This document shows positions 1-48,507 of a stretch of 64,000 nucleotides of DNA, piece after piece (the first letter of the stretch is position 1; each line of letters starts with the position of its first letter). The notes under the pieces were generated by a model that was given only the letters and a program-made list of their open reading frames with translations, did not search any database and was not told the DNA's origin. The stretch is from Marsupella aquatica (lineage: Eukaryota > Plantae > Marchantiophyta). The position numbers and the translations under genes are program-made. The stretch spans positions 1 to 64,000 of the forward strand of contig CCZZQB010000055.1 in NCBI GenBank assembly GCA_973895155.1, in the 5' to 3' direction.

Positions 1-615
1 ACTTTGGTCTTATTGCCCATCGGCAAGCCAAACACTTTGGCAATCACCTTGGGAGTAAGATAGAAATCCTTCCATATATCCTCGTGGAATTGGTCTCGGG
101 TTCCCATGACCCCACGAATTCTAATAGGTCTGAATCCGGCACCTCCGGCTTCAGCCATGGTAATCTTACAAAGGCCTCTAAGCCGGATCCGGCCATGAAG
201 CCTTGGTACTTCTTGGTCTGCATGGCTGTAAAGCATGCATCCTCCTCTCGTGCAAAATGTAGTTGCACCTCCTCTGGTAGGGTTGCCGCCCAGCCCTTCC
301 AGGTGTCATCCCTGGTTGGAATGGCATTGATGGGATCGTCCTCCTCTTCAGCTTCTCCCTGCCTCCTGCTCTGCTGCTCGGCTGGCTTCTTTGGTGCCGC
401 CGACCTCATTCTTTTTTCCGGGGTGGCTTCATCGTTGACGGCTCCCTTCCTCTTCATTTCGGCTGCCGTGGAGGTTTCTCCTAGCACGGTTGCCTTTGTC
501 CACCCCTCCGTGCTACCCTTCAACTCCCAGTGTATGTTGTTGCAGCGTTTGATGGCTTCTCGGATGCCGACGACTCTATCTTCGCAAAACAGAAGATCGT
601 CGAGCTGATTGGAAG
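1..615 (-). mobile_element. Family A LTR fragment (part of the LTR-encoded ORF), cut off at 615 by the full-length element
   Basis: Reverse complement matches the family A LTR ORF (ORF 44..523 ~ aa 175-340 of 731..4354). Homology stops exactly where TGTGATGCC begins at 616. Confidence 0.9.
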
Positions 616-3600
616 TGTGATGCCTAGACAGGAATCACTCGGCCGGTTAAGTGGGTAAAGCAGGAAGGCACCCTAGGAACACCTTAGTATAGGGACAAAA
701 CAAGGAAAATATAAACAATTAGGGGCAACCATGGAACCCGGGCCGAGGCCGGAGGTAAGGCTGAGGGTGAGAACCCGATTAGGGTTAGGGCGCGTTAAGC
801 GTCGGCGGCTAGGAAGGATCAACGGGAAGAAGGACCGGCGGAGGAGAGGGGTAAGGAGCGCTTGCAGGAGATGGTGGCTCATTTGCGAGCACGAACTAGG
901 CAGACGACTACGGGAGGCCAACTACTGTCAGCTGCTTAGGCAAGCACTCGGGGAGAGAGTAGATACCGACGATCGACCTAAGGAGGGTATGAGCAACGTC
1001 AATCAAGCGGCATATTTCTGGGGATGCCTGTTCGAACGGGCAACTGAGTACATCAAGACTTACGAGGACGAGGAGTCAGAAAGGGCAGCTCGAGAACGGC
1101 AGGAGCTCGCTCGATTGTGGGAGCTGCACAAGACGGCTTTCTTAGGAGGCAAACTCATCAAGGACGAGTTCCTGTGGACGCCTACTTCCAATCAACTCGA
1201 CGATCTTCTGTTTTGCAAAGACAGCGTCGTCGGCATCCGAGAGGCCATCAAGAACTGCAATGACATACACTGGGAATTAAAGGGTAGCACGGAAAGGTGG
1301 ACCCAGGCAACGGTGCTAGGAGAAACCTCCACGGCAGCAGAGATGAAGAGGAAGGGGGCCGTCAACGATGAAGCCACCCCGGCAAAAAGAACGAGGTCGG
1401 CGGCACCAAAGAGGCCAGCCGAGCAGCAGAGCAGGAGGCAGGGAGAAGCCGAAGAGGAGGAGGTCGATCCCATCAAGGCCATTCCAACCAGGGATGACAC
1501 CTGGAAGGGCTGGGCGGCAACCCTACCGGTGGAGGTGCAACTACATTTTGCACGGGAGGAGGATGCATGCTTTACGGCCATGCAGACCAAGAAGTACCAA
1601 GGCTTCATGGCCGGATCCGGCTTGGAGGCCTTTGTAAGATTACCATGGCTGAAGCCGGAGGTACCGGAGTCAGACCTATTAGAATTCGTGGGGTCATGGG
1701 AACCCGAGACCAATTCCACGAGGATATATGGGAAGGATTTCTATCTTACTCCCAAGGTAATTGCCGAAGTGTTTGGCTTACCGATGGGCAATAAGACCAA
1801 AGTTGATACCAGGAAGACCTTGCCTGACAAGGAGTTCCGGTCGTTCCCCGGGCCATCAACGAAGAATGGCTTCTTCCGGAACACCTGCACCAACCCGCAC
1901 ATAGGAGAGATGATCGACTTCTTGCGGGTGACCATGCATTGTAACTTGCCGAGGGCAGAGATCGGCAAGGCACAGGTCTATCTGGCAGAAAGGCCAGACC
2001 CAAGCCGGGACTACAACGGGTACCTCCTCAACCAATTGAAGAAGATCTTAAAGGAGGAGCAGCAGGTAATCGGCATGGGGAGCGTGTCGCGGCTTGGCTA
2101 TCACATGCCGCTGTTGTGCCGGTATGCCAGAGGTCAGACTTTTGCCCCGGTACTTCCCCTGCAGGTAAGGGCACCCGAGGAAGCTCCAACGCCGAGGCCG
2201 TTGGCTGAGAAGCCTCAACCACCTGTTAGTCCTACGATCGAGCAGGTGTTTAGGCCCAGGAAGGAAGACTTGCCGATGCAGCAACCAGGCATGCAGAGTC
2301 TGCTGAAACTACTGGAGAAAGAAAAGAAATCGGCATCGGCAACAACAACGGCAACGGCAACAATGCAGGACACTACTACAGAGGTAGGCCTACACCGGCT
2401 CACAAGAGAAAACCCCTTTGCTGGAGACAAGGAGAGAATCAGGCCGGAATCCAAGCCAGGTGTTCGAATGTACGTGGGAACCTCAAGCTCCGAATCTGAG
2501 GCAGAATTGCCTGAAGCTCCTACCGACGAAGAGGAGAGGGAGAAGCCGGACGTCCAAGAGGTAGAGGAGGCAGTGGAGGACTGCAGCCATGATAATTCCG
2601 GCTATGGGTCGGACCATCACGTTCCAGGAGTAAGGACCTGTGGCCGGTTTGTCCCCACACTTCCAAGGGTAGTGCGAGGGGACCCCAACCAGCAGAGTAG
2701 CCCTGAGTCTCCCCCACCAGATGTTGCTCCCCCGAGCTTCGACGGCATAAAACAGACGGTGCAGGAATTTCAGGAGCGAATCAAGCAGGAGGAAGAGGCC
2801 GCCCTGGCTAAGGAAAAGGATTTACCAGGAGGAGATTGGCCGGAGGACATCAGGTGGCTAGCCGAAAAAGGAAGCAAACCTCTAGCCACGATTGAAGAGA
2901 TCCGCAGGACGGCTTGGGAGCAGAGGCCACGATGGGCGATGCCGATCACTTCTACTTACTCCACCTACGCTAAGAATAGAGCCATGGAGTATGGTGAGAT
3001 GTGTGGGGAACTTGCGCTCGGCATCTTTGGAGAGGAGTTGGAGATAGGACCCTTTTTCCATAGGGAGCAGTTGGAGAAGCACCAATTAGAAGAAGCGGTG
3101 GCTTTAGAGAGAAGCAAGAAGGACGAGGTCATTTGGCGGCTTAGGAGGATGGGAGCCGAGATTGAAGATCTAAGGGCGGCCAAGAAAGCCCAAGATGAAC
3201 TGCGGATTAAACGACATGAGCTGAACATCATGCAGGGGCAGTTGGACGCCGCGCAGGCTGATAATCAGAATATCAAGGATAAACTGACTCAGACGCAGGA
3301 AGAGTTGGCCGACACGATCAAAGAGAGGGAGAAGTGGAAGCAAGAGCTGAAGAATACAGAGGAGGCCCACATAACAGCCAACAGCCGGGCCATGGCGGAG
3401 ACCCAAAGAAAGGAATGGGCGTTGAAAGGGGAGCTCGAGAAAATCCGCGGAGCCCTTGAGCAGAAGGAGGTCGAGTTAGGGAAATCCTATCAAGGGATTA
3501 TGGCGCTGCAGCAGGAGCTTGCGTCCCTGACGGCCAGCTTCAAGGCCGACCTAAGGGAGAAGGACGAGATGCTCGAACAGACTTACGCCAAGATGAACCA

Positions 3601-5266
3601 GATGGAGTCTGTCATCATTGCAGAGCTCGACAAGGAGCTAAGAGCAACCCAAGAGGAGAGGGCTACCTTGAAGAAGGAATTGGAGGAAGCCCACAGGGAG
3701 CAGGAGGAGGCCAAAAACGAGCTGGAGGGGGCACGTAAGGACCTGGATGAAACCCAAGAGGAGTTGGAGGAAATCACGAGGAAGATGGAGAACCTACAGC
3801 GGCGGGCCGACAACCAAACAGAGCGGCTGAAGAAACAAGCCGCAGTATTTAAATGCTTAGCTGCAGCAGGTCCATCTCCCGTTGGGATAAACCAGTTACC
3901 AGGGGTGGTAATTGCCGAAGGACAAGCCGCGCCAACTACACCAGTGCCGGAAGTAAGTGGGAAGGGGAAGGGACCAGCTGCCGAGCCACCAACGAAGAAG
4001 AAGCGGAAACCTTCAGGGTCAAGGAGTAATACGACTTCACAGGCCGTGGTGATCAAGGAGGTAGACCCAGCACCGACCCCAGACAGGGTCACGGCTAAGG
4101 ATCCAACTACCCTAGGGGAAGGGGAGGCCGAAGCCGAGGGAGTGGCTGAAGCCGAAGCCGTGGGAGTGGCTGAGGCCGAAGCCGTGGGTATTCCCGAGGC
4201 CGGTGTCGAGGCTGAAGCCGAAGGTGGACCCAGTCAGGCCGATGGAGAGTTGACTCAGTCAAGGGCAGGTAATCTGTCAGAGAATGAACCTACGGCAGTG
4301 GCTGAGGAGGAAGTGTTGGGGGCGTCCATTGAGGATCCACCACCGGTGTCGTGACGGTGCAAGGGCGCCGTTCCTTTTAGGGAAGGCGGACGTGGAGGGA
4401 GGAGGCGTGAGTGGGCAGGGCGGGCGCGAATCTCCACGTTTAGGATTAGGATCAGAACCAGGAGCGGCCCTGACACTTAGCTTAGTGGGATTGCGGTCCC
4501 ACTGGTAGGAGCAACACTTGTGCTCCTGCCTTGCTGTACATAGGTAGATTCGGGCAAGTAGATTACTGTTAAGTAGATTAGGCTTACGATGCAAAGAATG
4601 GCGGATCCACTACCAGGATAAGTACCTGGGCAGCGGGGAGCTCAGGGCCTCTTCTTTAGCAAGTTTTTAGTTTGCACCAGCCGGGCTGGGATCAAGTAGT
4701 ACAAGAAGCTCTCGGTTAGTCATACAGTGACCCTTGTGTATATTCATGTTTCCTCATGCCTAAGAGCTGAATAGAGTTGGCCTCACGGCTTAGTTCGCAG
4801 AACTTGTGTATGAGATGTACTGTTTGTATGGCAAGTGCATGGTATGACTCAGTCAGAATGAGTCATTTTGCTATTTGTGTGTCGCATTAACTTGTGTGAA
4901 GAGTGCCCACATCAACAGAAGGAAGGAAAGTAAGCAGGGGAGTGAGAGTTGGATGTGTCGAGCTGAGAGAGGTCTTAGCGGCTTAACCAAGCCTATTGGG
5001 GATCATTCCGGCGACGGAATCCAAACATACCTAACAGGAAGACAGGGGAAGACAGGGGAAGGCCTATATTAGGCCGGCTACGTATCTCATGACCCGATGA
5101 AGGATCTGTCCAGTATATGTGTGTAAAATGTTAATAGTAGTAGTAGAAGGTTAGCAGCGTCCCATGCCGCTAAGCCGCGGAAACGGCCTCGCCAAGCACA
5201 AAACCTGCGGGAATCGGCTTGAGCTGGGGGGTTTCTTGGGTTTAGGGAGCCATGGGACGCACCACA
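616..5266 (+). repeat. 5' LTR of element A (4651 bp)
   Basis: Starts TGTGATGC, ends GCACCACA (7/8 terminal inverted match). About 55 substitutions and no indels versus 11491-16141, counted by eye. Confidence 0.95.
731..4354 (+). CDS. LTR-encoded protein (1207 aa): basic N-terminus, plant-TE 'PMD/Transposase_32-like' domain, long coiled coil, acidic low-complexity tail
   Basis: Intact ORF wholly inside the LTR. Motif block GLEAFVRLPW..EFVGSW..IAEVFGLPMG..KNGF..C is shared with the ORFs of families B, C and D. Heptad-rich region spans ~aa 770-1030. Family assignment is by eye. Confidence 0.8.
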   Translation: MEPGPRPEVRLRVRTRLGLGRVKRRRLGRINGKKDRRRRGVRSACRRWWLICEHELGRRLREANYCQLLRQALGERVDTDDRPKEGMSNVNQAAYFWGCLFERATEYIKTYEDEESERAARERQELARLWELHKTAFLGGKLIKDEFLWTPTSNQLDDLLFCKDSVVGIREAIKNCNDIHWELKGSTERWTQATVLGETSTAAEMKRKGAVNDEATPAKRTRSAAPKRPAEQQSRRQGEAEEEEVDPIKAIPTRDDTWKGWAATLPVEVQLHFAREEDACFTAMQTKKYQGFMAGSGLEAFVRLPWLKPEVPESDLLEFVGSWEPETNSTRIYGKDFYLTPKVIAEVFGLPMGNKTKVDTRKTLPDKEFRSFPGPSTKNGFFRNTCTNPHIGEMIDFLRVTMHCNLPRAEIGKAQVYLAERPDPSRDYNGYLLNQLKKILKEEQQVIGMGSVSRLGYHMPLLCRYARGQTFAPVLPLQVRAPEEAPTPRPLAEKPQPPVSPTIEQVFRPRKEDLPMQQPGMQSLLKLLEKEKKSASATTTATATMQDTTTEVGLHRLTRENPFAGDKERIRPESKPGVRMYVGTSSSESEAELPEAPTDEEEREKPDVQEVEEAVEDCSHDNSGYGSDHHVPGVRTCGRFVPTLPRVVRGDPNQQSSPESPPPDVAPPSFDGIKQTVQEFQERIKQEEEAALAKEKDLPGGDWPEDIRWLAEKGSKPLATIEEIRRTAWEQRPRWAMPITSTYSTYAKNRAMEYGEMCGELALGIFGEELEIGPFFHREQLEKHQLEEAVALERSKKDEVIWRLRRMGAEIEDLRAAKKAQDELRIKRHELNIMQGQLDAAQADNQNIKDKLTQTQEELADTIKEREKWKQELKNTEEAHITANSRAMAETQRKEWALKGELEKIRGALEQKEVELGKSYQGIMALQQELASLTASFKADLREKDEMLEQTYAKMNQMESVIIAELDKELRATQEERATLKKELEEAHREQEEAKNELEGARKDLDETQEELEEITRKMENLQRRADNQTERLKKQAAVFKCLAAAGPSPVGINQLPGVVIAEGQAAPTTPVPEVSGKGKGPAAEPPTKKKRKPSGSRSNTTSQAVVIKEVDPAPTPDRVTAKDPTTLGEGEAEAEGVAEAEAVGVAEAEAVGIPEAGVEAEAEGGPSQADGELTQSRAGNLSENEPTAVAEEEVLGASIEDPPPVS

Positions 5267-5270
5267 TTTT

Positions 5271-5288
5271 TGGCGCTAGATGGAGGGG
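5271..5288 (+). promoter_or_regulatory. Primer binding site, probably tRNA-Asn
   Basis: TGGCGCTAGATGGAGGGG, 4 nt after the LTR end. Complementary, with one mismatch, to the plant tRNA-Asn(GUU) 3' end as recalled (...CCCCTCCTTCTAGCG-CCA). Confidence 0.8.
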
Positions 5289-5335
5289 GCATTTCTTAAG
5301 CCGTGAGATATGAAGTTAGAACGGAAGCGTAGGTA

Positions 5336-8329
5336 ATGACTGACCTTACGCCGAGGGAAGAAAGAGTGATTCAACGGGAGAGAGCTCGACTGCAGCAGCT
5401 CGCCGGGTGGCATGATACACAGCGACTGAGAGGGGCAGAAAGAGCTGGTAGCTCCGAAACTGGAAGTGGCGTCGAAGAAGACATACCAGAAGAAGAGTCG
5501 GTAAGGAGAAGTGAGTCTCCAACCGACATGGGGGAACCAGAGGCACGGCCAGACGAGAGGCCAGGGACCAGATTGAGCCAGCGGTCGCGCATACATTACA
5601 AAGCATTTCATGGGAGAGGAGATGAGGATCCGGACGAATGGTTGGATGATTTTGAGGGAACCGCTGCAGCAAATGGAGAATCGGCCATCAAGATGCAGAT
5701 TCTTCCCGGCCTGTTCAAGGGTGAGGCTAGGCCTTGGTACAGAGCATTAGATGTGGAAGATCAAGCCATCTGGGATATCTTCAAAACACTCTTTGTTAAG
5801 GAGTTTCGACCCATTGGAACTTCAGAACTAGCAGTGCTGAAGTTGGGACAACTTCGGTTCAAGGAGAACAAATCCTTCAGGAAGTTCTTGCAACGCTTTC
5901 AGAAACTGGTAAGACGTACAAAGACCAATGCATCTGAAGGTATGCAACTTCAATGGTTGGTGAATGCTTTGCCACAGAAGATGAGTTTTGCAATTAGGAA
6001 GGAGAACCCGGAGACTTTAGCCGAAGCAATTAAGGATATTCAATTATACATTAATGCAGATATCACAAGCCGGAAGAAACAGCTTAAGTCTGAGAGTTCC
6101 TCATCAGAGGAGGGATCACCCCATAAGAAAAAAGATAAGAAGAAGAAACATTCCAAGAAGTCTAGAAGTGATAAGTCAAGCTCGGATAGTGGGAGTAGCA
6201 AGAGTGAGTCATCTTCTAGTTCTGAAGAAGAAAAAACTAGGAAAAGGAAGGGCAGAAGGAGAGGGAAGACGAAAGTCAAGATGGAGGCTAAGCCACCAGA
6301 TAACATCGTAGCCCTTACCGAGCAACTTAAGGCTATCATTGCAGAGGTAAAACCAAAGAAGAAGGTAGTACAGGAGGATAGCTCTGTATGGTGTGCCTTA
6401 TGTTATAAAACCGAACACCATAAAGATGCGTGTCCTAAGCTTAATACTAATCATGTTCGGCATGTGGCCGAGATCAGACCATGTCAGGGAGAAGTAGAGT
6501 ACTTTTTGGGAGATGCCGCTGATAGTGTTTTCGGCATCAGTGAGACTGGAGCACGAGACCTATCCAACAGACCTGCATCTCTGTGGTCAGGATTAAGGAA
6601 CAATCCAGGAGAGATGTATCCTCGGATTATTCAGAACCCGTCAGTACCTCCTAGGCCGAATGTGCAAAGATTTGCGGCGTGCTATAATTGTGGTCAACCT
6701 GGCCATTTTGCTAGAGAATGCCCGAATGCACGCAAACAGGGTGATGGACAACCAGCTCAGCTATGTATGGGATGCCGACAGGAAGGTCATATGCTAGGGC
6801 AATGTCCTACTTGGTTGGCAGGCCTGGCCGCAAATCATAAGCTTTTGCCGATCAAGATCTTACCGCCAGGTACTACCCCCGGAGGAGTTCAAATCAACCA
6901 CATCGAACTAGGATGGCAAGAGGATGCCGAGGCAGAGTTCGTACCATTTGATGATGAGGCCGAAGCCCTATCAACCTTCTCAGAGGAGGATTTAGATCAT
7001 GATTGCTACCGGGTCTCTACTCGATCTACCAGAAGGAAGGAAAGGTGGGATGGGCTGGCCAAAAATAAAGGGAAGGTTACGGAGGAAAGGATCGACTCTT
7101 CGTCAACATCAACAGAAGGAGAAGGGAGGGCTCCGACAATACAGGTAAGCCATGAGCCCACCAGTGAAACCAATCCTTCACAAGATAGCGACTTCAATCG
7201 AGATCATCCTAAGTTGTTCTACCCCTCTGTTACGGCTAGTGTTAAGGAACAACTAAGAGAATTAGAAACCCTGGAGAATACCGAAGCCATTGCCAAGGAT
7301 GTAAAACGAGCAAAAGCATTGTTTGCTTCGGAAGACCCAACAGCTGTGGAGACTAGCGTGGCAAAACTGGCCGAATCCAAGACGGAAACACCACCAGAAG
7401 AGAAGCCGATTGTTCCCTATGACCTGGCTAAAGATGTACTAGAATCTAGAGTCTCGGCAACAGTAGGTCAACTATTGAAAAATAGCCCGTACTTCCGGAA
7501 GCAATTAAGGAAGGCTATTCTCGGCAAGCCGAGATTACCCAAGGTAGCAACCAGATCCGACGTACTAATGATAGAAGAAGATCAAGGAGCCCCAGCATTA
7601 CCATTAATGATTCAAGGAGAATTATTACTACGGGTACCCATCGATGGAGGATCAGGGGTATGTATTATGATTGATTCAACAGCAAAAGGGTGGGGTCTAA
7701 CACCGGAGATGACTGGAAGAGTGTTGAACATGGCCAATGGATATCAGGTCATTCCGACGGGAGTGTTAACCGGCATCAAGACAGAGATAGGAGGTATCTT
7801 CTTTAGCATTAACTATGTAGTAATGAAGCCGGTAAATCCTACGTCATTCCGGCTATTGATTGGTAGGCCATGGCTGTACCTAGCCGAGGTAATAGAAGAT
7901 TGGGGTAAAAAGCAGTTCACTTTCGGGACCCCCTCTATCACGGTATCCTGGGACACTAAGGATGACCGTAGGAAAAGCATAAGGGAAGTAGATGGGTACG
8001 ATAGTGGACTGGAGTCAGCCGATGAAGTACGTTGGTTAGAATGCCTCACTAACCTAACCGAAGAAGGTGTCTTTGGACCAGAGGTACCCCCCAGCGGATT
8101 ATGGCAAGAACCAATGGAAGGTGACTTGGAAGAAGAAGACGAAGAGGTCGAGGACTGCTTTACAATAGAATCCACCTTTTTAGCTGCAATTCCGGAGGAA
8201 GTTAAGGATGTAGACCAATTGGATGAAACGGCTAAGTGGGGAGCAGTAGCAGGGACAATGGATTTTCTGCAGGCGTTGTGGCAGAGCCGACGGGGTCCAC
8301 AACGCCATCGATCATCGGCAAGGAATTAA
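5336..8329 (+). CDS. gag: Gag-protease polyprotein (997 aa)
   Basis: Retrotransposon gag core (EDPDEWL..F), three CCHC knuckles (CALCYKTEHHKDAC, CYNCGQPGHFAREC, CMGCRQEGHMLGQC), and aspartic protease IDGGSG ... LLIGRPWL. Confidence 0.92.
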   Translation: MTDLTPREERVIQRERARLQQLAGWHDTQRLRGAERAGSSETGSGVEEDIPEEESVRRSESPTDMGEPEARPDERPGTRLSQRSRIHYKAFHGRGDEDPDEWLDDFEGTAAANGESAIKMQILPGLFKGEARPWYRALDVEDQAIWDIFKTLFVKEFRPIGTSELAVLKLGQLRFKENKSFRKFLQRFQKLVRRTKTNASEGMQLQWLVNALPQKMSFAIRKENPETLAEAIKDIQLYINADITSRKKQLKSESSSSEEGSPHKKKDKKKKHSKKSRSDKSSSDSGSSKSESSSSSEEEKTRKRKGRRRGKTKVKMEAKPPDNIVALTEQLKAIIAEVKPKKKVVQEDSSVWCALCYKTEHHKDACPKLNTNHVRHVAEIRPCQGEVEYFLGDAADSVFGISETGARDLSNRPASLWSGLRNNPGEMYPRIIQNPSVPPRPNVQRFAACYNCGQPGHFARECPNARKQGDGQPAQLCMGCRQEGHMLGQCPTWLAGLAANHKLLPIKILPPGTTPGGVQINHIELGWQEDAEAEFVPFDDEAEALSTFSEEDLDHDCYRVSTRSTRRKERWDGLAKNKGKVTEERIDSSSTSTEGEGRAPTIQVSHEPTSETNPSQDSDFNRDHPKLFYPSVTASVKEQLRELETLENTEAIAKDVKRAKALFASEDPTAVETSVAKLAESKTETPPEEKPIVPYDLAKDVLESRVSATVGQLLKNSPYFRKQLRKAILGKPRLPKVATRSDVLMIEEDQGAPALPLMIQGELLLRVPIDGGSGVCIMIDSTAKGWGLTPEMTGRVLNMANGYQVIPTGVLTGIKTEIGGIFFSINYVVMKPVNPTSFRLLIGRPWLYLAEVIEDWGKKQFTFGTPSITVSWDTKDDRRKSIREVDGYDSGLESADEVRWLECLTNLTEEGVFGPEVPPSGLWQEPMEGDLEEEDEEVEDCFTIESTFLAAIPEEVKDVDQLDETAKWGAVAGTMDFLQALWQSRRGPQRHRSSARN

Positions 8330-11300
8330 ATACCAAGGGATCGGCATACAAGCCGATTACGAGGGCAGAACAAATTGAGGCCCTATTAAAAGCCGAGAGA
8401 GCACAGCGGCCTAACTCTCAGGAGCAAGAGGTGGATGAGATGGACAGACACGATCTAGAGCCAAGGCAGGAAGGGGAGCCGACCACTAATTCAAAACCGA
8501 ATAGACCGGTAAGGGGACAATCTATGGACACCAAGGAAGGGACCGACTCGGCTAGTCCAGCCGAGATCCCAGTTTATGGAGGTATGAGATTAGAGAGACT
8601 GGAAGCCGAACTGGACCCGAATTTGAAGAAGCAGATTAATATGATCCAAGCACGGCAATATCGGAAGCTCGACTTAGGAGAGGGAAGAGAACTGAACTTA
8701 GGGAGAAACCTAGCACCTGAGCTCGAGAAAGAGATCAATGACTTATTGATTGAATTTCAGGATGTGTTTGCATGGAGTCACCAAGATCTAAAGGGAGTAG
8801 ATCCAACACTAGGGGAACATCGAATTGATCTCATGTTAGGAGCCAAATCATTTCGACAACCAATTCGAAGGATGAACCCGAAGTATTCCCTGCTGGTCAA
8901 AACAGAAATCGACAAACTAGTGGAAGCTGGATTCATCACTCTAGTCCTGCATTCAGACTGGGTGTCTCCAATTGTGATAGTTCCCAAGAAAGCTGGACCC
9001 GATGGTAAACCCAAGATCCGGGTTTGTCAGGATTACAGGAAGCTGAATGAAGCAACATTAAAAGACCATTTTCCTTTACCGTTTACTGATATGGTACTAG
9101 ACATGGTAGCCAGTCATGAACTATATTCATTCATGGATGGATACTCTGGTTATAACCAAATCAGGATTCGGCAGGAAGACCAAATCAAGACGGCCTTCAT
9201 CACGGAATGGGGGATCTATGTCTTCAATCGTATGCCGTTTGGACTCTGCAACGCACCAGCTATGTTCCAACGATTAATGGTGAACATTTTTCATGATTAC
9301 TTGAGAAAGTTCATGGAAATCTTCATTGATGACTTTGCAGTATTCGGGAAGGCATCGAAACATGCTAAATACCTCAGGAAAACCTTCATGAGATGTAGAG
9401 AGGTGGGTCTCAAGTTACACCCAGATAAATGTTTTTTTGCAGTAACCGAGGGGGTGCTACTAGGTCACAAGGTATCAAGGAAGGGCATTGAGATTGACAA
9501 AGGTAAGCTAGCAGTATGGCTAGATATCATGCAACCTAAGAACATAAAGGATGTAAGATCCTTCTTGGGATGCATTGGTTACTATCACCGGTTCATCAAG
9601 GATTTTGCCAAGCTAGCTTTACCATTAACCAATATGCTCAAGGCAGGAGCAGACTTCGAACCCACACCCGAACGAGTCACAGCGGTGGTAGAATTGAAGC
9701 AGATGTTAGTAGAGGCCCCAGTCATGATAGCACCGGACTGGAACAAAGATTTTCATGTTTTTGTAGATGTCTCGGGCTTCTGTATTGGCTCAGTACTAAG
9801 TCAGTTGGATGAGAAAGGAAGGGACCATCCCATATACTTCGCAAGCCGTCAGCTTGCCGATGCCGAACGGAACTACTCTACCACGGAAAGAGAAGCATTA
9901 GGAGTCATTTATTCTTGTAAAAAGTTTAGGCATTATTTACTAGGGTACAAGGTAATCTTTCATACTGATCATGAAAGTTTGAAGTACCTAGTCAATAAGC
10001 CGGACCTTACAGGCAGAGTAGCAAGATGGATTTTGCTATTACAGGAGTTTGACTATGAGCTGAGGATCAAGCCAGGAAAGTTACATGCCAATGCCGACTT
10101 CTTTTCAAGGATCACAGGTAAACCTGCCACGGATTGCATCGATGATCGATTCCCCGACGAGGAGCTATTCGTTGTGGAAATAGCTGGTACATGGTACCCT
10201 GAGATTTTACAATTTCTCAGCACTTCCAGATTACAGCCAGGATTAAGCCGAGAGCAAGCCGCAGTCTTTGTGCGGAAGGTCAGACAGTATCAGTGCATTA
10301 AAGGCATACTGCACAAGCATGGAATCAACGGCACGATTCAAAGGTGTTTGGAAAAGAGAGAGGTAAAACGAGTCCTACGGGCCATGCATGGAGAGGAGGC
10401 CGGAGGACATTTTGCCCCAGTAACCACATCTAAGAAGATATTAAATGCCGGTTACTGGTGGCCCACCTTGCACAAAGATGTCTATCAGTTTATCAAACAA
10501 TGCGATCCTTGTCAACGAGCGGGAGGACCAAGGGCGTCCACCAGGCATCCACTGCACCCTATTCTACCTCTGGCACCATTCGAGAAGTGGGGTATTGATT
10601 ACATTGGACCTCTGAAACCACTGACCCACCCTCGACGGAACAAGTACATAATCCTGGCTACGGATTATGCAACTAAATGGGTAGAGGCCAGACCAACAAC
10701 GAAGGATGATGCAATTACTACGGCTAGATTCATGTATGAGCAGATCTTCACCAGGTATGGAGCACCCCTAGAATTAGTTAGTGATAGAGGAACCCATTTT
10801 TTGAATGATATAATTAGTCGTTTAAATGAGCAGTATTTAGTTAAACATAGGCCTACTACTCCCTACCATCCAAAGGCAAACGGGTTGACAGAACGAGCAA
10901 ACGGGATCATAGGAAAGATATTGAACAAGACAGTAGCTCAGAACAAACTCGATTGGGATGATAAATTGTTTGCTGCTGTTTTTGCTTACAATCTGGCCTA
11001 TAAATCCACTACCGGTCATACACCCTTCTTCTTAACCTTTGGACAAGAAGCCCTGGTACCCATGCAACTTGAGATACCGACATTTCAAGTTACAATTGAG
11101 GAAAGAGCCTCAGCGGAGGAGAGCCTAAAGGAGCGAGAATATAGGTTAGAAGCTTTAGAGGAAGCGAGAATGATTTCAGCCGAGAGAGTAGAATATAGAC
11201 AGAATATCATGAAGCAGCAGTATGATAAAAGGTTAAAAGTAGTTAGTATTCATACCGGTGATCTTGTGCTACTTTATGACAGTAGGTATAGTAGGTTTCC

Positions 11301-11502
11301 AGGAAAGCTTTACACTCGCTGGTTAGGACCCTTTAGAGTAACCATGATGTTCCCCAATGGCTCCGTGCAATTGGCCAACATTACGGGAGAGGTATATCCA
11401 GTTCGCATCCATTATGACCGCCTCAAGAAATACTATATGGACGAAGATGAAGTTGTTCGCGAGGACGCTTCACAATTAAGTGGGGAGCTATGTGATGCCT
11501 AG
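8236..11502 (+). CDS. pol: Pol: reverse transcriptase - RNase H - integrase (reached by -1 frameshift)
   Basis: RT motifs RVCQDYRKLN, MDGYSGYNQI, MPFGLCNAP, FIDD. RNase H DVSGF..EREAL..TDH..AD. Integrase HHCC (H..GH..CDPC), catalytic WGID/SDRG/ERAN and GPF module. No stops. Confidence 0.95.
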   Translation: MGSSSRDNGFSAGVVAEPTGSTTPSIIGKELNTKGSAYKPITRAEQIEALLKAERAQRPNSQEQEVDEMDRHDLEPRQEGEPTTNSKPNRPVRGQSMDTKEGTDSASPAEIPVYGGMRLERLEAELDPNLKKQINMIQARQYRKLDLGEGRELNLGRNLAPELEKEINDLLIEFQDVFAWSHQDLKGVDPTLGEHRIDLMLGAKSFRQPIRRMNPKYSLLVKTEIDKLVEAGFITLVLHSDWVSPIVIVPKKAGPDGKPKIRVCQDYRKLNEATLKDHFPLPFTDMVLDMVASHELYSFMDGYSGYNQIRIRQEDQIKTAFITEWGIYVFNRMPFGLCNAPAMFQRLMVNIFHDYLRKFMEIFIDDFAVFGKASKHAKYLRKTFMRCREVGLKLHPDKCFFAVTEGVLLGHKVSRKGIEIDKGKLAVWLDIMQPKNIKDVRSFLGCIGYYHRFIKDFAKLALPLTNMLKAGADFEPTPERVTAVVELKQMLVEAPVMIAPDWNKDFHVFVDVSGFCIGSVLSQLDEKGRDHPIYFASRQLADAERNYSTTEREALGVIYSCKKFRHYLLGYKVIFHTDHESLKYLVNKPDLTGRVARWILLLQEFDYELRIKPGKLHANADFFSRITGKPATDCIDDRFPDEELFVVEIAGTWYPEILQFLSTSRLQPGLSREQAAVFVRKVRQYQCIKGILHKHGINGTIQRCLEKREVKRVLRAMHGEEAGGHFAPVTTSKKILNAGYWWPTLHKDVYQFIKQCDPCQRAGGPRASTRHPLHPILPLAPFEKWGIDYIGPLKPLTHPRRNKYIILATDYATKWVEARPTTKDDAITTARFMYEQIFTRYGAPLELVSDRGTHFLNDIISRLNEQYLVKHRPTTPYHPKANGLTERANGIIGKILNKTVAQNKLDWDDKLFAAVFAYNLAYKSTTGHTPFFLTFGQEALVPMQLEIPTFQVTIEERASAEESLKEREYRLEALEEARMISAERVEYRQNIMKQQYDKRLKVVSIHTGDLVLLYDSRYSRFPGKLYTRWLGPFRVTMMFPNGSVQLANITGEVYPVRIHYDRLKKYYMDEDEVVREDASQLSGELCDA
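8260..8319 (+). other. Putative -1 programmed ribosomal frameshift signal (slippery heptamer plus H-type pseudoknot)
   Basis: G GAT TTT in the gag frame at 8260-8266, then a 5-nt spacer. Perfect 10-bp stem 8272-8281/8297-8306. Loop GCCGA (8286-8290) can pair with TCGGC (8315-8319). The pol ORF is in the -1 frame. Confidence 0.75.
11476..11490 (+). promoter_or_regulatory. Polypurine tract of element A
   Basis: TTAAGTGGGGAGCTA immediately before the 3' LTR. A homologous tract precedes the family B 3' LTR. Confidence 0.8.
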
Positions 11503-14500
11503 ACAGGAATCACTCGACCGGTTAAGTGGGTAAAGCAGGAAGGCACCCTAGGAACACCTTAGTATAGTGACAAAACAAGGAAAATATAAACAATTAGGGG
11601 CAACCATGGAACCCGGGCAGAGGCCGGAGGTAAGGCTGAGGGTGAAAACCCGATTAGGGTTAGGGCGCGTTAAGCGTCGGCGGCTAGGAAGGATCAATGG
11701 GAAGAAGGACCGGCAGAGGAGAGGGGTAAGGAGCGCTTGCAGGAGATGGTGGCTCATTTGCGAGCACGAACTAGGCAGACGACTACGGGAGGCCAACTAC
11801 TGTCAGCTGCTTAGGCAAGCACTCGGGGAGAGAGTAGATACCGACGATCGACCTAAGGAGGGTATGAGCAACGTCAATCAAGCGGCACATTTCTGGGGAT
11901 GCCTGTTCGAACGGGCAACTGAGTACATCAAGACTTACGAGGACGAGGAGTCAGAAAGGGCAGCTCGAGAACGGCAGGAGCTCGCTCGATTGTGGGATCT
12001 GCACAAGACGGCTTTCTTAGGAGGCGAACTCATCAAGGACGAGTTCCTGTGGACGCCTACTTCCAATCAACTCGACGATCTTCTGTTTTGCAAAGACAGC
12101 ATCGTCGGCATCTGAGAGGCCATCAAGAACTGCAACGACATACACTGGGAATTAAAGGGTAGCACGGAAAGGTGGACCCGGGCAACGGTGCTAGGAGAAA
12201 CCTCCACGGCAGCAGAGATGAAGAGGAAGGGAGCCGTCAACGATGAAGCCACCCCGGCAAAAAGAACGAGGTCGGCGGCACCAAAGAAGCCAGCCGAGCA
12301 GCAGAGCAGGAGGCAGGGAGAAGCCGAAGAGGAGGAGGTCGATCCCATCAAGGCCATTCCAACCAGGGATGACACCTGGAAGGGCTGGGCGGCAACCCTA
12401 CCGGTGGAGGTGCAACTACATTTTGCATGGGAGGAGGATGCATGCTTTACGGCCATGCAGACCAAGAAGTACCAAGGCTTCATGGCCGGATCCGGCTTGG
12501 AGGCCTTTGTAAGATTACCATGGCTGAAGCCGGAGGTACCGGAGTCAGACCTATTAGAATTCGTGGGGTCATGGGAACCCGAGACCAATTGCACGAGGAT
12601 ATATGGGAAGGATTTCTATCTTACTCCCAAGGTAATTGCCGAAGTGTTTGGCTTGCCGATGGGCAATAAGACCAAAGTTGATACCAGGAAGACCTTGCCT
12701 GACAAGGAGTTCCGGTCGTTCCCCGGGCCATCAACGAAGAATGGCTTCTTCCGGAACACCTGCACCAACCCGCACATAGGAGAGATGATCGACTTCTTGC
12801 GGGTGACCATGCATTGTAACTTGCCGAGGGCAGAGATCGGCAAGGCACAGGTCTATCTGGCAGAAAGGCCAGACCCAAGCCGGGACTACAACGGGTACCT
12901 CCTCAACCAATTGAAGAAGATCTTAAAGGAGGAGCAGCAGGTAATCGGCATGGGGAGCGTGTCACGGCTTGGCTATCACATGCCGCTGTTGTGCCGGTAT
13001 GCCAGAGGTCAGACTTTTGCCCCGGTACTTCCCCTGCAGGTAAGGGCACCCGAGGAAGCTCCAACACCGAGGCCGTTGGCTGAGAAGCCTCCACCACCTG
13101 TTAGTCCTACGATCGAGCAAGTGTTTAGGCCCAGGAAGGAAGACTTGCCGATGCAGCAACCAGGCATGCAGAGTCTGCTGAAACTACTGGAGAAAGAAAA
13201 GAAATCGGCATCGGCAACAACAACGGCAACGGCAACAATGCAGGACACTACTACAGAGGTAGGCCTACACCGGCTCACAAGAGAAAACCCCTTTGCTGGA
13301 GACAAGGAGAGAATCAGGCCGAAATCCAAGCCAGGTGTTCGAATGTACGTGGGAACCTCAAGCTCCGAATCTGAGGCAGAATTGCCTGAAGCTCCTACCG
13401 ACGAAGAGGAGAGGGAGAAGCCGGACGTCCAAGAAGTAGAGGAGGCAGTGGAGGACTGCAGCCATGATAATTCCGGCTATGGGTCGGACCATGACATTCC
13501 AGGAGTAAGGACCTGTGGCCGGTTTGTCCCCACACTTCCAAGGGTAGTGCGAGGGGACCCCAACCAGCAGAGTAGCCCTGAGTCTCCCCCACCAGATGTT
13601 GCTCCCCCGAGCTTCGACGGCATAAAACAGACGGTGCAGGAATTTCAGGAGCGAATCAAGCAGGAGGAAGAGGCCGCCCTGGCTAAGGAAAAGGATTTAC
13701 CAGGAGGACATTGGCCGGAGGACATCAGGCGGCTAGCCGAAAAAGGAAGCAAACCTCTAGCCACGATTGAAGAGATCCGCAGGACGGCGTGGGAGCAGAG
13801 GCCACGATGGGCGATGCCGATCACTTCTACTTACTCCACCTACGCTAAGAATAGAGCCATGGAGTATGGTGAGATGTGTGGGGAACTTGCGCTCGGCATC
13901 TTTGGAGAGGAGTTGGAGGTAGGACCCTTTTTCCATAGGGAGCAGTTGGAGAAGCACCAATTAGAAGAAGCGGTGGCTTTAGAGAGAAGCAAGAAGGACG
14001 AGGTCATTTGGCGGCTTAGGAGGATGGGAGCCGAGATTGAAGATCTAAGGGCGGCCAAGAAAGCCCAAGATGAACTGCGGATTAAACGACATGAGCTGAA
14101 CATCATGCAGGGGCAGTTGGACGCCGCGCAGGCTGATAATCAGAATATCAAGGATAAACTGACTCAGACGCAGGAAGAGTTGGCCGACACGATCAAAGAG
14201 AGGGAGAAGTGGAAGCAAGAGCTGAAGAATACAGAGGAGGCCCATATAACAGCCAACAGCCGGGCCATGGCGGAGACCCAAAGAAAGGAATGGGCGTTGA
14301 AAGGGGAGCTCGAGAAAATCCGCGGAGCCCTTGAGCAGAAGGAGGTCGAGTTAGGGAAATCCTATCAAGGGATTATGGCGCTGCAGCAGGAGCTTGCGTC
14401 CCTGACGGCCAGCTTCAAGGCCGACCTAAGGGAGAAGGACGAGATGCTCGAACAGACTTACGCCAAGATGAACCAGATGGAGTCTGTCATCATTGCAGAG

Positions 14501-16141
14501 CTCGACAAGGAGCTAAGAGCAACCCAGGAGGAGAGGGCTACCTTGAAGAAGGAATTGGAGGAAGCCCACAGGGAGCAGGAGGAGGCCAAAAACGAGCTGG
14601 AGGGGGCACGTAAGGACCTGGATGAAACCCAAGAGGAGTTGGAGGAAATCACGAGGAAGATGGAGAACCTACAGCGGCGGGCCGACAACCAAACAGAGCG
14701 GCTGAAGAAACAAGCCGCAGTATTTAAATGCTTAGCTGCAGCAGGTCCATCTCCCGTTGGGACAAACCAGTTACCAGGGGTGGTAATTGCTGAAGGACAA
14801 GCCGCGTCAACTGCACCAGTGCCGGAAGTAAGTGGGAAGGGGAAGGGACCAGCTGCCGAGCCACCAACGAAGAAGAAGCGGAAACCTCCAGGGTCAAGGA
14901 GTAATACGACTTCACAGGCCGTGGTGATCAAGGAGGTAGACCCAGCACCGACCCCAGACAGGGTCACGGCTAAGGATCCAACTACCCTAGGGGAAGGGGA
15001 GGCCGAAGCCGAGGGAGTGGCTGAAGCCGAAGCCGTGGGAGTGGCTGAGGCCGAAGCCGTGGGTATTGCCGAGGCCGGTGTCGAGGCTGAAGCCGAAGGT
15101 GGACCCAGTCAGGCCGATGGAGAGTTGACTCGGTCAAGGGCAGGTAATCTGTCAGTAGGCGGGCCAACGGCAGTGGCTGAGGAGGAAGTGTTGGGGGCAT
15201 CCATTGAGGATCCACCACCGGTGTCGTGACGGTGCAAGGGCACCGTTCCTTTTAGGGAAGGCGGACGTGGAGGGAGGAGGCGTGAGTGGGCAGGGCGGGC
15301 GCGGATCTCCACGTTTAGGATTAGGATCAGAACCAGGAGCGGCCCTGACACTTAGCTTAGTGGGATTGCGGTCCCACTGGTAGGAGCAACACTTGTGCTC
15401 CTGCCTTGCTGTACATAGGTAGATTCGGGCAAGTAGATTACTGTTAAGTAGATTAGGCTTACGATGCAAAGAATGGCGGATCCACTACCAGGATAAGTAC
15501 CTGGGCAGCGGGGAGCTCAGGGCCTCTTCTTTAGCAAGTTTTTAGTTTGCACCAGCCGGGCTGGGATCAAGTAGTACGAGAAGCTCTCGGTTAGTCATAC
15601 AGTGACCCTTGTGTATATTCATGTTTCCTCATGCCTAAGAGCTGAATAGAGTTGGCCTCACGGCTTAGTTCGCAGAACTTGTGTATGAGATGTACTGTTT
15701 GTATGGCAAGTGCATGGTATGATTCAGTCAGAATGAGTCATTTTGCTATTTGTGTGTCGCATTAACTTGTGTGAAGAGTGCCCACATCAACAGAAGGAAG
15801 GAAAGTAAGCAGGGGAGTGAGAGTTGGATGTGTCGAGCTGAGAGAGGTCTTAGCGGCTTAACCGAGCCTATTGGGGATCATTCCGGCGGCGGAATCCAAA
15901 CATACCTAACAGGAAGACAGGGGAAGACAGGGGAAGGCCTATATTAGGTCGGCTACGTATCTCATGACCCGATGAAGGATCTGTCCAGTATATGTGTGTA
16001 AAATGTTAATAGTAGTAGTAGAAGGTTAGCAGCGTCCCATGCCGCTAAGCCGCGGAAACGGCCTCGCCAAGCACGAAACCTGCGGGAATCGGCTTGAGCT
16101 GGGGGGTTTCTTGGGTTTAGGGAGCCATGGGACGCACCACA
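11491..16141 (+). repeat. 3' LTR of element A (4651 bp)
   Basis: Direct repeat of 616-5266; TG...CA termini. Confidence 0.95.
11606..15229 (+). pseudogene. Second copy of the LTR-encoded ORF with one premature stop
   Basis: Colinear with 731..4354. CGA>TGA at 12113-12115 splits it into ORFs 11567..12115 and 12188..15229. Confidence 0.88.
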
Positions 16142-30261: not shown

Positions 30262-30265
30262 ATAT

Positions 30266-31721: not shown

Positions 31722-32130
31722 TCAAAAGGGCGAGCGGATGGCAGCGTCCGTGAATTCCAAAAAAAGGTGAACGTGAGCGAATGGCCCGCAGTGCCATCAG
31801 CTCCTCTCTTATGGGGGTGCCCGGACGAGCCCGAGCGTGAGAAGGTCAGGCCGTTTGGTCATTGATAACGAGCTGAAGTCGGCGTCTCGGTCCAAGCGTG
31901 ATTCTTCTAACTGATTTTTACTCCGCTGCCGCCACCGTACCTCGGTCGTGTGTAATAATCCCTTTCCTGAACTTGTAATTATTCGGTTATCTTAACCTAC
32001 TCCTAATCTAATCATAATGGCAACTTGACGGCTATACGTGCTATTCTACGCTATGGCTACGGTCCTAATGACCGTATAAGTCCTAATCTACGACCTGGGT
32101 TCGGTCAAGTGACACGTTACCCGTGTCACA
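30266..32130 (-). mobile_element. Family C LTR, 5' part (continues at 16803-16142), inserted in the family B 3' LTR
   Basis: Begins TGTGACACG at 32130, exactly where family B LTR homology to 50181-50200 breaks. Carries an ORF homologous to the family A and B LTR ORFs. Confidence 0.8.
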
Positions 32131-41830: not shown

Positions 41831-41863
41831 CTCCCTCAGTTGCCGTTTGTACTCTGGATTGTT

Positions 41864-48022: not shown

Positions 48023-48391
48023 CTTAATGGCGTCTTCCCCGTTGGCCTTAGCAGTGGCTTCAAACTCATCCAACCATTCATCTGGATCATCCTCATGACG
48101 CCCTTTGAAAGGTCGATAATTGAACCGCGACCGTTGTGATATTTGTGGGGGAGCTTGGGCAGCGCGGGCCATCGGTGGGGTGGCCGCCATAGGTACTGGT
48201 GGCGGTGGTGGTGCAGCAGGGACCAGAGCAGGACCGGCTGGACCGGACCCCAAAGGTCCCGGTGGTATGTTCATTTGTCGAGGCGATTGCGAATCCTCCA
48301 AACCTGAAGAGTCAGAGCTTGTGGGGGTTGCACTCTCTCGTTCGATGGTCAATCTCCTCAAGTAAGCTGCTTGAGAACGAGTGACGGGCAT
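48023..48391 (-). pseudogene. gag: Element B gag N-terminus
   Basis: MPVTRSQ..SQRSRFNYRPFKGRHEDDPDEWLDEFEATAKANGEDAIK, homologous to element A gag. Confidence 0.85.
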
Positions 48392-48489
48392 TTACTCATA
48401 TAAATGCAATGGTTAGTAACTCACAAGGGCCTGGTGTATTCTGCCTAAGTGCACCCGCACATGTCTCCCCTCTACTACACGTAGAGTGC

Positions 48490-48507
48490 CCCTTCCATCT
48501 AGCACCA
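48490..48507 (-). promoter_or_regulatory. Primer binding site of element B (tRNA-Asn-like)
   Basis: TGGTGCTAGATGGAAGGG, similar to the element A PBS, 13 nt downstream of the LTR end. Confidence 0.75.

What the first reader, a model, noticed from the sequence alone, without database searches (positions are those of the whole stretch)
616..5266. LTRs that are themselves genes: four Ty3/gypsy families carry a large conserved protein ORF entirely inside the LTR
Seen: the 4651-bp family A LTR contains an intact 1207-aa ORF, present in both LTRs and in the solo LTRs. Family B (3960 bp), family C and family D (3611 bp) LTRs each carry an ORF with the same motif order (G.E.(F/L)..(L)PW; EF...(W/F); (I/V)FGLP.G; (K/D)(N/D)G(F/Y)...C) followed by a coiled coil, despite little nucleotide similarity. 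Established: extra ORFs in plant gypsy elements are normally internal (Athila env-like/PMD ORFs, Ogre ORF1); complete genes inside an LTR are best known from retroviruses (MMTV sag in U3). Inference: this lineage has moved a conserved accessory gene into the LTR, so each element has two copies and every solo LTR keeps a self-contained cassette. Basic NLS-like patches and no transmembrane segment suggest a nuclear protein, for example an anti-silencing or targeting factor.
Basis: partly seen in the sequence, partly recalled or inferred. Interest (0 to 1): 0.92.

Follow-up and report, generated by a model that had tools for sequence, protein, structure and literature searches.

The report
Liverwort retrotransposon LTRs carrying a gene
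A group of liverwort Ty3/gypsy retrotransposons has unusually long terminal repeats (3.6-5 kb), each holding a conserved, selected protein gene whose core domain most resembles a transposon-encoded DNA-binding anti-silencing protein; I found no description of this layout for plant elements.

Summary
Window 616-16141 is a complete Ty3/gypsy element. Its two 4651-bp LTRs are 98.8% identical, end in TG..CA, and abut a PBS and a PPT. A 1207-codon ORF lies wholly inside the LTR. Across diverged copies it is under purifying selection: dN/dS is 0.26-0.31 overall and 0.08-0.14 in the core domain. The first 86 codons show no coding signal, so the protein probably starts at codon 87.

Three other LTR families in the window carry a homologous domain. 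B has both LTRs. D is a solo LTR with a target-site duplication. C is a truncated fragment.

The same layout (LTR with ORF, PBS, gag-pol, PPT, LTR) recurs in two elements of the liverwort Calypogeia fissa and on a metagenome contig.

The domain matches no Pfam family. A confident AlphaFold model has one outlying PDB match: VANC21, the DNA-binding anti-silencing protein of a Mutator-type transposon. That match is borderline.

Only the 5' LTR copy of family A is intact. The other copies carry breaks.

Function (DNA-binding accessory factor acting on its own LTRs) and expression route are inferred, not shown. Whether the ORF lies in U3, R or U5 is open. I rate it a new variant of a known kind.

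The parts
616..16141 (+). Complete family A Ty3/gypsy element (LTR, PBS, gag, pol, PPT, LTR). No target-site duplication.
616..5266 (+). Family A 5' LTR, 4651 bp, TG..CA ends
731..4354 (+). LTR-borne ORF, intact copy (1207 codons). The selected coding part probably starts at 989 (1121 aa).
711..717 (+). TATAAAC box, invariant in all four A-LTR copies; candidate promoter element upstream of the ORF
   Evidence: not a strict TATAWAW
1538..2128 (+). Core alpha/beta domain, about 197 folded residues. No Pfam family. Best structural match is VANC21.
3086..3871 (+). Long helical, coiled-coil-type region. Assigned by composition only (Pro/Gly-poor, rich in E/K/Q/L/R).
   Evidence: coiled-coil Pfam families hit weakly in relatives
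4355..5266 (+). Non-coding 3' part of the LTR. It is far more conserved between copies (9-11% divergence) than synonymous sites of the ORF (dS about 0.4). It holds a 16-nt block shared with families B and B'.
5271..5289 (+). Primer binding site, 19 nt. The same 19-nt degenerate pattern matches without mismatch in family B (48489-48507, minus strand) and in C. fissa element L003; a 15-nt core also matches in L014.
5336..8329 (+). gag ORF (Retrotrans_gag, zinc knuckle)
8236..11502 (+). pol ORF (RT, RNase H, integrase; no chromodomain, no second RNase H)
11474..11490 (+). Polypurine-type tract directly before the 3' LTR. Its context is conserved in B and in C. fissa elements.
11491..16141 (+). 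Family A 3' LTR. Its ORF copy (11606-15229) has one in-frame stop.
56451..61011 (+). Solo family A LTR with 5-bp duplication CCGAC. ORF copy has two in-frame stops and in-frame indels.
43442..48022 (-). Family A LTR copy inside the gag of element B. No duplication. ORF decayed (several stops, at least six frame changes).
1..615 (-). Fragment of an older family A LTR that forms the left flank of the A element
48521..52480 (-). Family B 5' LTR, 3960 bp. Reading frame 52006 to 49814 (domain, then a short coiled coil) is interrupted once. Canonical TATAAAA lies 106 nt upstream of its ATG.
38090..48520 (-). Internal region of element B (PBS, gag, pol). It is interrupted by the A-LTR copy, and the D solo LTR sits in its pol tail. 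The last 72 nt of pol plus the PPT lie at 34407-34478.
32131..34406 (-). Family B 3' LTR, first 2276 bp only, 93% identical to the 5' LTR. It carries the ORF copy (one frame change) and is cut off by the C LTR.
34479..38089 (-). Family D solo LTR, 3611 bp, TG..CA, 5-bp duplication. Domain ORF plus coiled-coil ORF lie within 35467-37310, in two frames.
30265..32130 (-). Family C LTR fragment, truncated at its 3' side. ORF region 30294-31721 is 27% identical to B over about 480 aa and has one in-frame stop.
52756..54800 (+). B' fragment: the 3' part of a further LTR, 72% identical to B

Best explanation
These are non-chromovirus Ty3/gypsy retrotransposons of a liverwort. Their LTRs have grown to 3.6-5 kb because an accessory gene lies between the LTR's 5' end and the PBS, so reverse transcription copies it to both ends.

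Shown:
- the LTR boundaries, PBS and PPT;
- purifying selection on the ORF;
- four diverged families in one genome, plus the same layout in Calypogeia fissa.

The protein has these parts:
- a variable N-terminal part with basic patches;
- an alpha/beta domain of about 200 aa whose only outlying structural match is VANC21;
- a long coiled-coil-type helix;
- an acidic, low-complexity tail.

Inferred: it is a nuclear, oligomeric DNA-binding factor that recognises its own family's LTRs and keeps them transcriptionally active, or otherwise serves the element's expression. Each family would carry its own diverged version.

Also inferred, with less support: the ORF is transcribed from a promoter near the LTR's 5' end (canonical TATA in B, invariant TATAAAC in A). 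That would place it in the R/U5 part of the LTR. This is the position of Ogre ORF1, 5' of gag and in sense, but upstream of the PBS rather than downstream of it.
For: Architecture.

Same layout elsewhere:
- L003: LTR from 8748, ORF 10001-11557, PBS 13656, gag, pol, PPT, 3' LTR from 19937.
- L014: LTR from 9016, ORF 10001-11893, PBS 14151, 3' LTR from 20413.
- L013: pol end, ORF, gag on one collapsed contig.

Selection: dN/dS is 0.26-0.31 over the ORF and 0.08-0.14 in the domain. The signal is frame-specific from codon 87 on.

Family: 207 relatives at E <= 1e-3 among 1.84 billion representatives. The only named ones are from Calypogeia fissa.

Fold:
- pLDDT 84-85.
- PDB top hit 9lnj_A, VANC21 bound to DNA: E = 0.042, probability 0.85, TM 0.45. 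All other PDB hits have TM <= 0.16.
- Best viral-library TM is 0.27.
- A preprint reports that PMD-C domains resemble the DUF1985 domain of VANC.

Promoter-like boxes.

The pol relatives are from liverworts. The angiosperm hits include Tat/Ogre-type proteins.
Against: - No HMM or profile test links the domain to PMD, Transposase_32, Transposase_28 or DUF1985.
- The VANC21 match is borderline. It is a single hit and rests on a predicted model.
- No DNA-binding, localisation or expression data exist.
- A strict TATA box upstream of the ORF is present only in B. None is found in the C. fissa loci.
- A second TATA-like or polyA-like block near the LTR's 3' end, shared by A and B, fits a U3 location of the ORF equally well.
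- Only one of eight ORF copies in the window is intact.
Confidence: 0.5

Rival explanations
1. The ORF lies in U3. The LTR promoter sits in the conserved last ~900 bp. The gene is therefore a 3' accessory ORF downstream of pol that falls behind the PPT, and it is expressed from the genomic RNA or a spliced subgenomic RNA. This is the MMTV sag or Athila/Tat 3'-ORF logic. The copies in the 5' LTR and in solo LTRs would then be silent by-products of reverse transcription.
For: - In most LTR elements U3 is the largest part of the LTR (general knowledge).
- The 912-bp segment after the ORF is much more conserved than synonymous sites. It holds a TATA-like/UGUA-type block shared by A and B.
- AG/GT contexts sit just before the ORF's first ATG and just before the gag ATG. 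These could be splice sites.
- No strict TATA lies upstream of the ORF in A, D or the C. fissa loci.
Against: - B has a canonical TATAAAA 106 nt upstream of the ORF ATG.
- A has an invariant TATAAAC upstream.
- The TATA-like box at about 5066 in A is not conserved in the solo copies.
- The first 86 codons after the putative acceptor are not under coding constraint.
Confidence: 0.3
2. The ORF is the first cistron of the genomic RNA (in U5, with a short R upstream). It acts on RNA or particles, for example in packaging, chaperoning or assembly, like other 5' extra ORFs. It does not act on DNA or chromatin.
For: - It is in sense, 5' of gag, like Ogre ORF1.
- A coiled coil suits assembly proteins.
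- Basic patches could bind RNA.
Against: - The only structural match is a DNA-binding protein.
- A U5 of about 4 kb has no precedent known to me.
- gag translation downstream of a 3.4-kb ORF would need splicing or an internal entry mechanism, for which nothing is shown.
Confidence: 0.12
3. The ORF is a chance or decaying reading frame, or the 'LTR' is a mis-called repeat (a tandem or recombinant arrangement), and no gene is embedded in an LTR.
For: - Most copies in the window are broken.
- The A element lacks a target-site duplication.
Against: - dN/dS is 0.08-0.31 with a frame-specific signal.
- Homologous domains occur in four families and in another species.
- The repeats end in TG..CA and abut the PBS and PPT.
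- Solo copies have 5-bp duplications.
- Two C. fissa elements have the same layout.
Confidence: 0.03

Closest known systems
Ogre ORF1 and other extra ORFs of Tat/Athila-clade plant Ty3/gypsy elements (PMD, Transposase_28, Transposase_32 domains; rice Retrosat2 ORF0)
   Same: - A sense accessory ORF 5' of gag in a non-chromovirus plant gypsy element with very long LTRs.
- The protein evolves fast and differs between families.
- The angiosperm pol relatives of this element include Tat/Ogre-type proteins, one with PF20167.
   Different: - Known extra ORFs are described as internal, between PBS and gag or between pol and PPT. Here the PBS lies downstream of the ORF and the PPT upstream of it, so the ORF is part of the LTR and is duplicated.
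- No Pfam PMD, Transposase_28 or Transposase_32 match.
VANC21 (DUF1985 domain), anti-silencing protein of the Arabidopsis VANDAL21 Mutator-like DNA transposon
   Same: - It is the only outlying structural match of the domain.
- It is a transposon-encoded accessory protein.
- VANC binds non-coding DNA of its own family and co-evolves with its targets. That would fit four strongly diverged versions in one genome.
   Different: - No sequence or HMM similarity; the structural match is borderline.
- The carrier is an LTR retrotransposon, not a MULE.
- This protein adds a long coiled coil.
- No binding or methylation data exist.
MMTV sag (retroviral accessory gene inside the U3 part of the LTR)
   Same: A complete protein-coding ORF lies inside the LTR and is therefore present at both ends of the integrated element.
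   Different: - No sequence relation.
- The ORF here is 3.4-3.6 kb, against about 1 kb for sag.
- Whether it lies in U3 at all is untested. Sequence features leave R or U5 at least as likely.
Liverwort 'Tat Z2' elements (Tat-like, without the additional RNase H)
   Same: - Liverwort host.
- gag-pol without a second RNase H and without a chromodomain.
   Different: - Membership was not tested by RT phylogeny.
- The passages of that paper returned by my term searches do not mention ORFs in LTRs.

Membership tests
Ty3/gypsy LTR retrotransposon | Direct long terminal repeats ending in TG..CA | tested here: met
   A: 616-5266 and 11491-16141, 98.8% identical. B, D and the solo A copies also have TG..CA ends.
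Ty3/gypsy LTR retrotransposon | PBS next to the 5' LTR and polypurine tract next to the 3' LTR | tested here: met
   PBS at 5271-5289 (A) and 48489-48507 (B). PPT at 11474-11490 (A) and before 34406 (B).
Ty3/gypsy LTR retrotransposon | gag, then pol in the order RT, RNase H, integrase | tested here: met
   Pfam hits on 5336-8329 and 8236-11502.
Ty3/gypsy LTR retrotransposon | 4-5 bp target-site duplication | tested here: inconclusive
   Present for solo A (CCGAC) and solo D (TACTT). Absent for the complete A element and for the A copy in B's gag.
Tat/Athila (non-chromovirus) clade | No chromodomain after integrase | tested here: met
   No chromodomain hit in pol.
Tat/Athila (non-chromovirus) clade | Additional RNase H (Tat); RT phylogeny | tested here: not met
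   No second RNase H-type domain. A 2026 paper describes liverwort Tat-like elements without it. RT phylogeny was not run.
Plant mobile domain / Transposase_32 / Transposase_28 (PF10536, PF20167, PF04195) | Match to the family HMM at or above the curated cut-off | tested here: not met
   No hit for the window proteins even at E <= 10. Among 67 relatives, only 3 give weak PF20167 hits, best E = 0.006; none among the other 41.
Plant mobile domain / Transposase_32 / Transposase_28 (PF10536, PF20167, PF04195) | Profile similarity to a protein that carries the domain | tested here: inconclusive
   hhalign of A5 and A6 against Vicia protein P0275 (PF20167 at 973-1170). The best local alignment falls inside that domain both times, but P = 0.28 and 0.15. 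hmmsearch finds nothing.
VANC / DUF1985 | Sequence match to DUF1985 or to the VANC21 chain | tested here: not met
   No such Pfam hit. A profile search of PDB sequences does not find 9lnj.
VANC / DUF1985 | Same fold as the VANC21 crystal structure | tested here: inconclusive
   9lnj_A is the top PDB hit: E = 0.042, probability 0.85, TM 0.45 (query-normalised, with about 50 disordered residues in the query). All other PDB hits have TM <= 0.16. The shorter model gave TM 0.48 but E = 9.4.
VANC / DUF1985 | Sequence-specific binding to own non-coding DNA and loss of silencing marks | not testable with these tools
   No binding or epigenomic data. A small GTAGATT cluster after the ORF is only a lead.
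Retroviral U3 accessory gene (MMTV sag type) | ORF wholly inside the LTR | tested here: met
Retroviral U3 accessory gene (MMTV sag type) | ORF upstream of the LTR transcription start (in U3) | not testable with these tools
   No transcript ends are available. Promoter-like boxes occur both upstream of the ORF and downstream of it.
Ogre ORF1-type 5' extra ORF | Sense ORF between the PBS and gag | tested here: not met
   The ORF is 5' of gag and in sense, but the PBS (5271-5289) lies downstream of it.

The most novel reading that the evidence does not exclude
The LTR is an autonomous gene cassette with its own promoter, ORF and polyadenylation site. It encodes a VANC-like, sequence-specific anti-silencing factor that co-evolves with binding sites in the same LTR. 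The factor would then stay physically linked to its targets, be present twice per element, and remain available in trans from solo LTRs after the element is lost. This would be a retrotransposon counterpart of the VANDAL/VANC system in an early-diverging land-plant lineage.
Probability: 0.2. Interest if true: 0.85.

Novelty: new variant of a known kind. Interest (0 to 1): 0.68.

Why it matters
LTRs are treated as non-coding control regions, and annotation pipelines and classification schemes assume this. Here a large, selected gene lies inside the LTR in several families and in at least two liverwort species.

- LTR-based dating, solo-LTR counts and gene prediction in bryophyte genomes need to allow for coding LTRs.
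- It gives a natural case for asking how the PBS and PPT positions shift relative to accessory genes.
- If the VANC-like reading holds, transposon-encoded anti-silencing factors would be known from retrotransposons as well as DNA transposons, and from a lineage that split early from other land plants.

Tried and rejected
1. A word-indexed homology search with the full ORF (region 240-560) found nothing. The exhaustive profile search was needed instead.
2. Pfam scans of the window proteins and of 108 relatives gave no family, only scattered coiled-coil hits and three weak PF20167 hits.
3. A profile search of PDB sequences gave nothing meaningful.
4. A word-indexed search with the domain alignment gave 15 unnamed hits, none with a Pfam domain.
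5. HMMER with family profiles against a PF20167-bearing Vicia protein gave no hit. hhalign was non-significant.
6. The viral structure library gave no match with TM above 0.27.
7. I looked for transcript-like features (polyA tails, shared ends) on JGI and Logan contigs that carry relatives. None were found, so these contigs say nothing about expression.
8. A k-mer search for repeated motifs in the non-coding LTR parts found only a small GTAGATT cluster of marginal significance.
9. My by-eye match of A's codon-87 start with B's first Met is not supported by BLASTP. The codon-87 start rests on dN/dS alone.
10. A strict TATA box upstream of the ORF is present only in B, so a general 'own promoter' is not established.
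11. No tRNA genes were found in the window or the loci, so the primer tRNA remains unnamed.

Full report
**1. What is in the window**

Self-comparison shows a direct repeat of 4651 bp at 616-5266 and 11491-16141, 98.8% identical.
- Each copy starts with TG and ends with CA.
- A 19-nt primer binding site starts 4 nt after the first copy (5271-5289).
- A purine-rich tract ends directly before the second copy.
- The 6.2 kb between them encodes gag (Retrotrans_gag, zinc knuckle) and pol (RT, RNase H, integrase) in Ty3/gypsy order. There is no chromodomain and no second RNase H.
- This is a complete LTR retrotransposon. It has no target-site duplication. Its left flank is an inverted fragment of an older LTR of the same family.

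The ORF at 731-4354 (1207 codons) lies wholly inside the 5' LTR.

**2. Other copies and families**

Family A LTRs also occur in three other places:
- a solo LTR at 56451-61011, with the 5-bp duplication CCGAC;
- a copy at 43442-48022 (minus strand) inside the gag of another element;
- the fragment at 1-615.

The second element (B, minus strand) has the following parts.
- Its 5' LTR lies at 48521-52480 (3960 bp), followed by a PBS matching the same 19-nt pattern as A's.
- Its gag-pol is 35-65% identical to A.
- Its pol tail and PPT context are almost the same as A's, directly before its 3' LTR, which starts at 34406.
- Only the first 2276 bp of that 3' LTR remain, 93% identical to the 5' LTR.
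- There the sequence switches to the start of a different LTR, family C, which begins with the same TGTGA-type terminus at 32130.
- C is itself cut off near 30265 by an unrelated tandem-repeat region.

Between B's pol and its pol tail sits family D at 34479-38089. It is exactly 3611 bp, has TG..CA ends, and is flanked by a 5-bp duplication. That makes it a solo LTR.

A further diverged LTR 3' part (B') lies at about 52756-54800.

C is only a fragment, and D has no internal partner in the window.

**3. The ORF is a gene under selection**

All four families encode a homologous domain of about 165-200 aa.
- tblastn between A, B and C gives E = 1e-12 to 1e-25, and B and C align over about 480 aa.
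- The four-family alignment has 14 invariant columns.
- D against an A/B/C profile gives E = 1.3e-3.
- D-like proteins are common among the database relatives.

Between the A element and the two older A-LTR copies, which differ by 15-16% in the ORF:
- dN/dS is 0.26-0.31 for the whole ORF;
- it is 0.08-0.14 for the domain;
- it is 0.21-0.24 for the coiled-coil region.

The other two frames show no such signal. Codons 1-86 have dN/dS near 0.9, so the selected protein probably starts at codon 87 (nt 989), which gives 1121 aa.

The 912 bp after the stop codon diverge by only 9-11%, against dS of about 0.4. They therefore carry strongly constrained cis functions.

Copy state:
- A 5' LTR copy: intact.
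- A 3' LTR copy: one in-frame stop.
- A solo copy (plus strand): two stops.
- A copy in B's gag (minus strand): several stops and at least six frame changes.
- B 5' copy: one interruption.
- B 3' copy: one frame change, and truncated.
- C: one stop, and truncated.
- D: at least one frame change.

**4. The layout is shared with another species**

A profile of the four domains found 207 proteins at E <= 1e-3, and 49 at E <= 1e-10, among 1.84 billion representatives. All named members come from the leafy liverwort Calypogeia fissa. The rest are from metagenomes and raw-read assemblies.

Around two C. fissa proteins the DNA shows the same order:
- L003: LTR start (8748), ORF (10001-11557), the same PBS (13656), gag, pol, the same PPT context, 3' LTR (from 19937).
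- L014: LTR start (9016), ORF (10001-11893), PBS (14151), gag, pol, PPT, 3' LTR (from 20413).

An ENA metagenome contig (L013) reads pol end, ORF, gag. That is what a short-read assembly gives when it collapses the two LTRs.

The pol of element A is closest to liverwort proteins:
- C. fissa, 65-67% identity;
- Riccia sorocarpa, 53-56%;
- Marchantia, 49%.

The angiosperm hits include proteins with an additional RNase H and one with PF20167. The source is thus most likely a liverwort, and the lineage is near the Tat/Athila group. No RT phylogeny was run.

**5. What the protein looks like**

There are no Pfam, PDB-sequence or named homologues.

AlphaFold models of the domain, built with alignments of relatives, are confident: pLDDT 84.1 for 157 aa and 85.5 for 251 aa.

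Against the PDB:
- The longer model has one outlier, 9lnj_A, VANC21 bound to its target DNA. E = 0.042, probability 0.85, TM 0.45 with about 50 disordered query residues counted.
- Every other PDB hit has TM <= 0.16.
- The shorter model also gave its highest TM (0.48) to the same chain, but with E = 9.4.
- The viral library gave nothing above TM 0.27.

VANC21 is the sequence-specific anti-silencing protein of VANDAL21. A preprint reports that PMD-C domains resemble its DUF1985 domain.

Direct tests of a PMD or Transposase_32 link failed or were non-significant. I therefore treat the domain as a new family with a probable VANC/DUF1985-like fold, not as a PMD member.

Downstream of the domain lie a Pro-rich linker, a long helical region of coiled-coil composition, and an acidic tail. 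The A and B N-terminal parts are not detectably similar.

**6. How it may be expressed**

Evidence for a start upstream of the ORF:
- B has a canonical TATAAAA 106 nt before its ATG.
- A has a TATAAAC that is invariant in four copies which otherwise differ by 17-20% there.

Evidence against a general upstream start:
- No strict TATA is found upstream in A, D or the C. fissa loci.
- A and B share a TATA-like/UGUA-type block in the conserved 3' part.
- AG/GT contexts lie just before the ORF's first ATG and just before the gag ATG.

My rough probabilities for the three placements:
- R (an LTR-internal transcription unit): about 0.4.
- U3 (sag-like): about 0.3.
- U5 (first cistron of the genomic RNA): about 0.12.

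Only transcript ends can decide.

**7. Literature**

[quoted passage not shown] They report PMD, Transposase_28 and Athila ORF-1 domains in Ogre, Retand and Athila. Retrosat2 ORF0 is described as upstream of the gag-pol ORF. Phrase searches for ORFs in LTRs returned only retroviral cases. I found no description of this layout. The library does not cover subscription journals.

**8. Verdict**

The architecture is a new variant of the known theme 'plant gypsy element with an accessory ORF'. The function is inferred from one borderline structural match.

- The tblastn table printed alignment bounds on a decayed copy, which indirectly show where frames change. I did not use or repeat them.
- I looked at consensus lines printed by the alignment tool when choosing the C-terminal bound of the second model. 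The same bound follows from the alignment blocks.
- No repaired, joined or consensus sequence was built.

Noticed in passing
window 16142-30260: A 14-kb stretch with no similarity to gag or pol but with long intron-free ORFs: a NIF-type phosphatase (17193-18317, minus strand), an N6/N4 DNA-methylase-like ORF just under the Pfam cut-off (18467-20836, minus strand), an unassigned 551-aa ORF (21034-22689, minus strand) and a 1271-aa DUF7869 protein (25862-29677, plus strand). It also holds tandem arrays at 22781-23458, 24686-25639 and 29898-30260. It may be one or two large DNA transposons or a virus-like insertion.
   Followed up: no
window 5011-5026, 15886-15901, 43687-43702, 48683-48698, 54625-54640, 60754-60769: A 16-nt block with stem-loop potential is shared by the 3' parts of the A, B and B' LTRs: 6 matches against 0.23 expected. 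It is a candidate cis element conserved across families whose LTRs otherwise do not align.
   Followed up: partly
window 4545-4580 and the matching places in the other A-LTR copies: Three GTAGATT repeats lie within about 40 nt, roughly 200 nt after the ORF stop. Enrichment is marginal. It is a possible binding-site cluster.
   Followed up: partly
window 5271-5289 and 48489-48507; L003 13656-13674; L014 from 14151: The same 19-nt PBS pattern matches without mismatch in families A and B and in C. fissa element L003; a 15-nt core also matches in L014. Their pol proteins are only about 60-68% identical. The primer tRNA could not be named.
   Followed up: partly
window 611-615 and 16142-16146: The complete A element has no target-site duplication (GGAAG against AACCC). 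Its right flank does not continue the older LTR that forms its left flank. This suggests recombination or a later rearrangement.
   Followed up: partly
window 5330-5338, 48389-48400 (minus strand); L003 about 13755-13765: An AG followed by GT(A/G)ATG or TAAATG sits directly at the gag start codon in A, B and a C. fissa element. This may be a conserved splice site or a start context.
   Followed up: no
L004-L010 (JGI samples 3300056800-3300061194): One 495-aa relative (P0161) is encoded identically on contigs from eight different metagenome samples. This suggests an abundant liverwort, or a young high-copy family, in those samples.
   Followed up: no
L002 (C. fissa) 5854-10325: Here the domain ORF lies about 4.4 kb downstream of the pol end. 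Either the LTR is even longer, or the arrangement differs.
   Followed up: no
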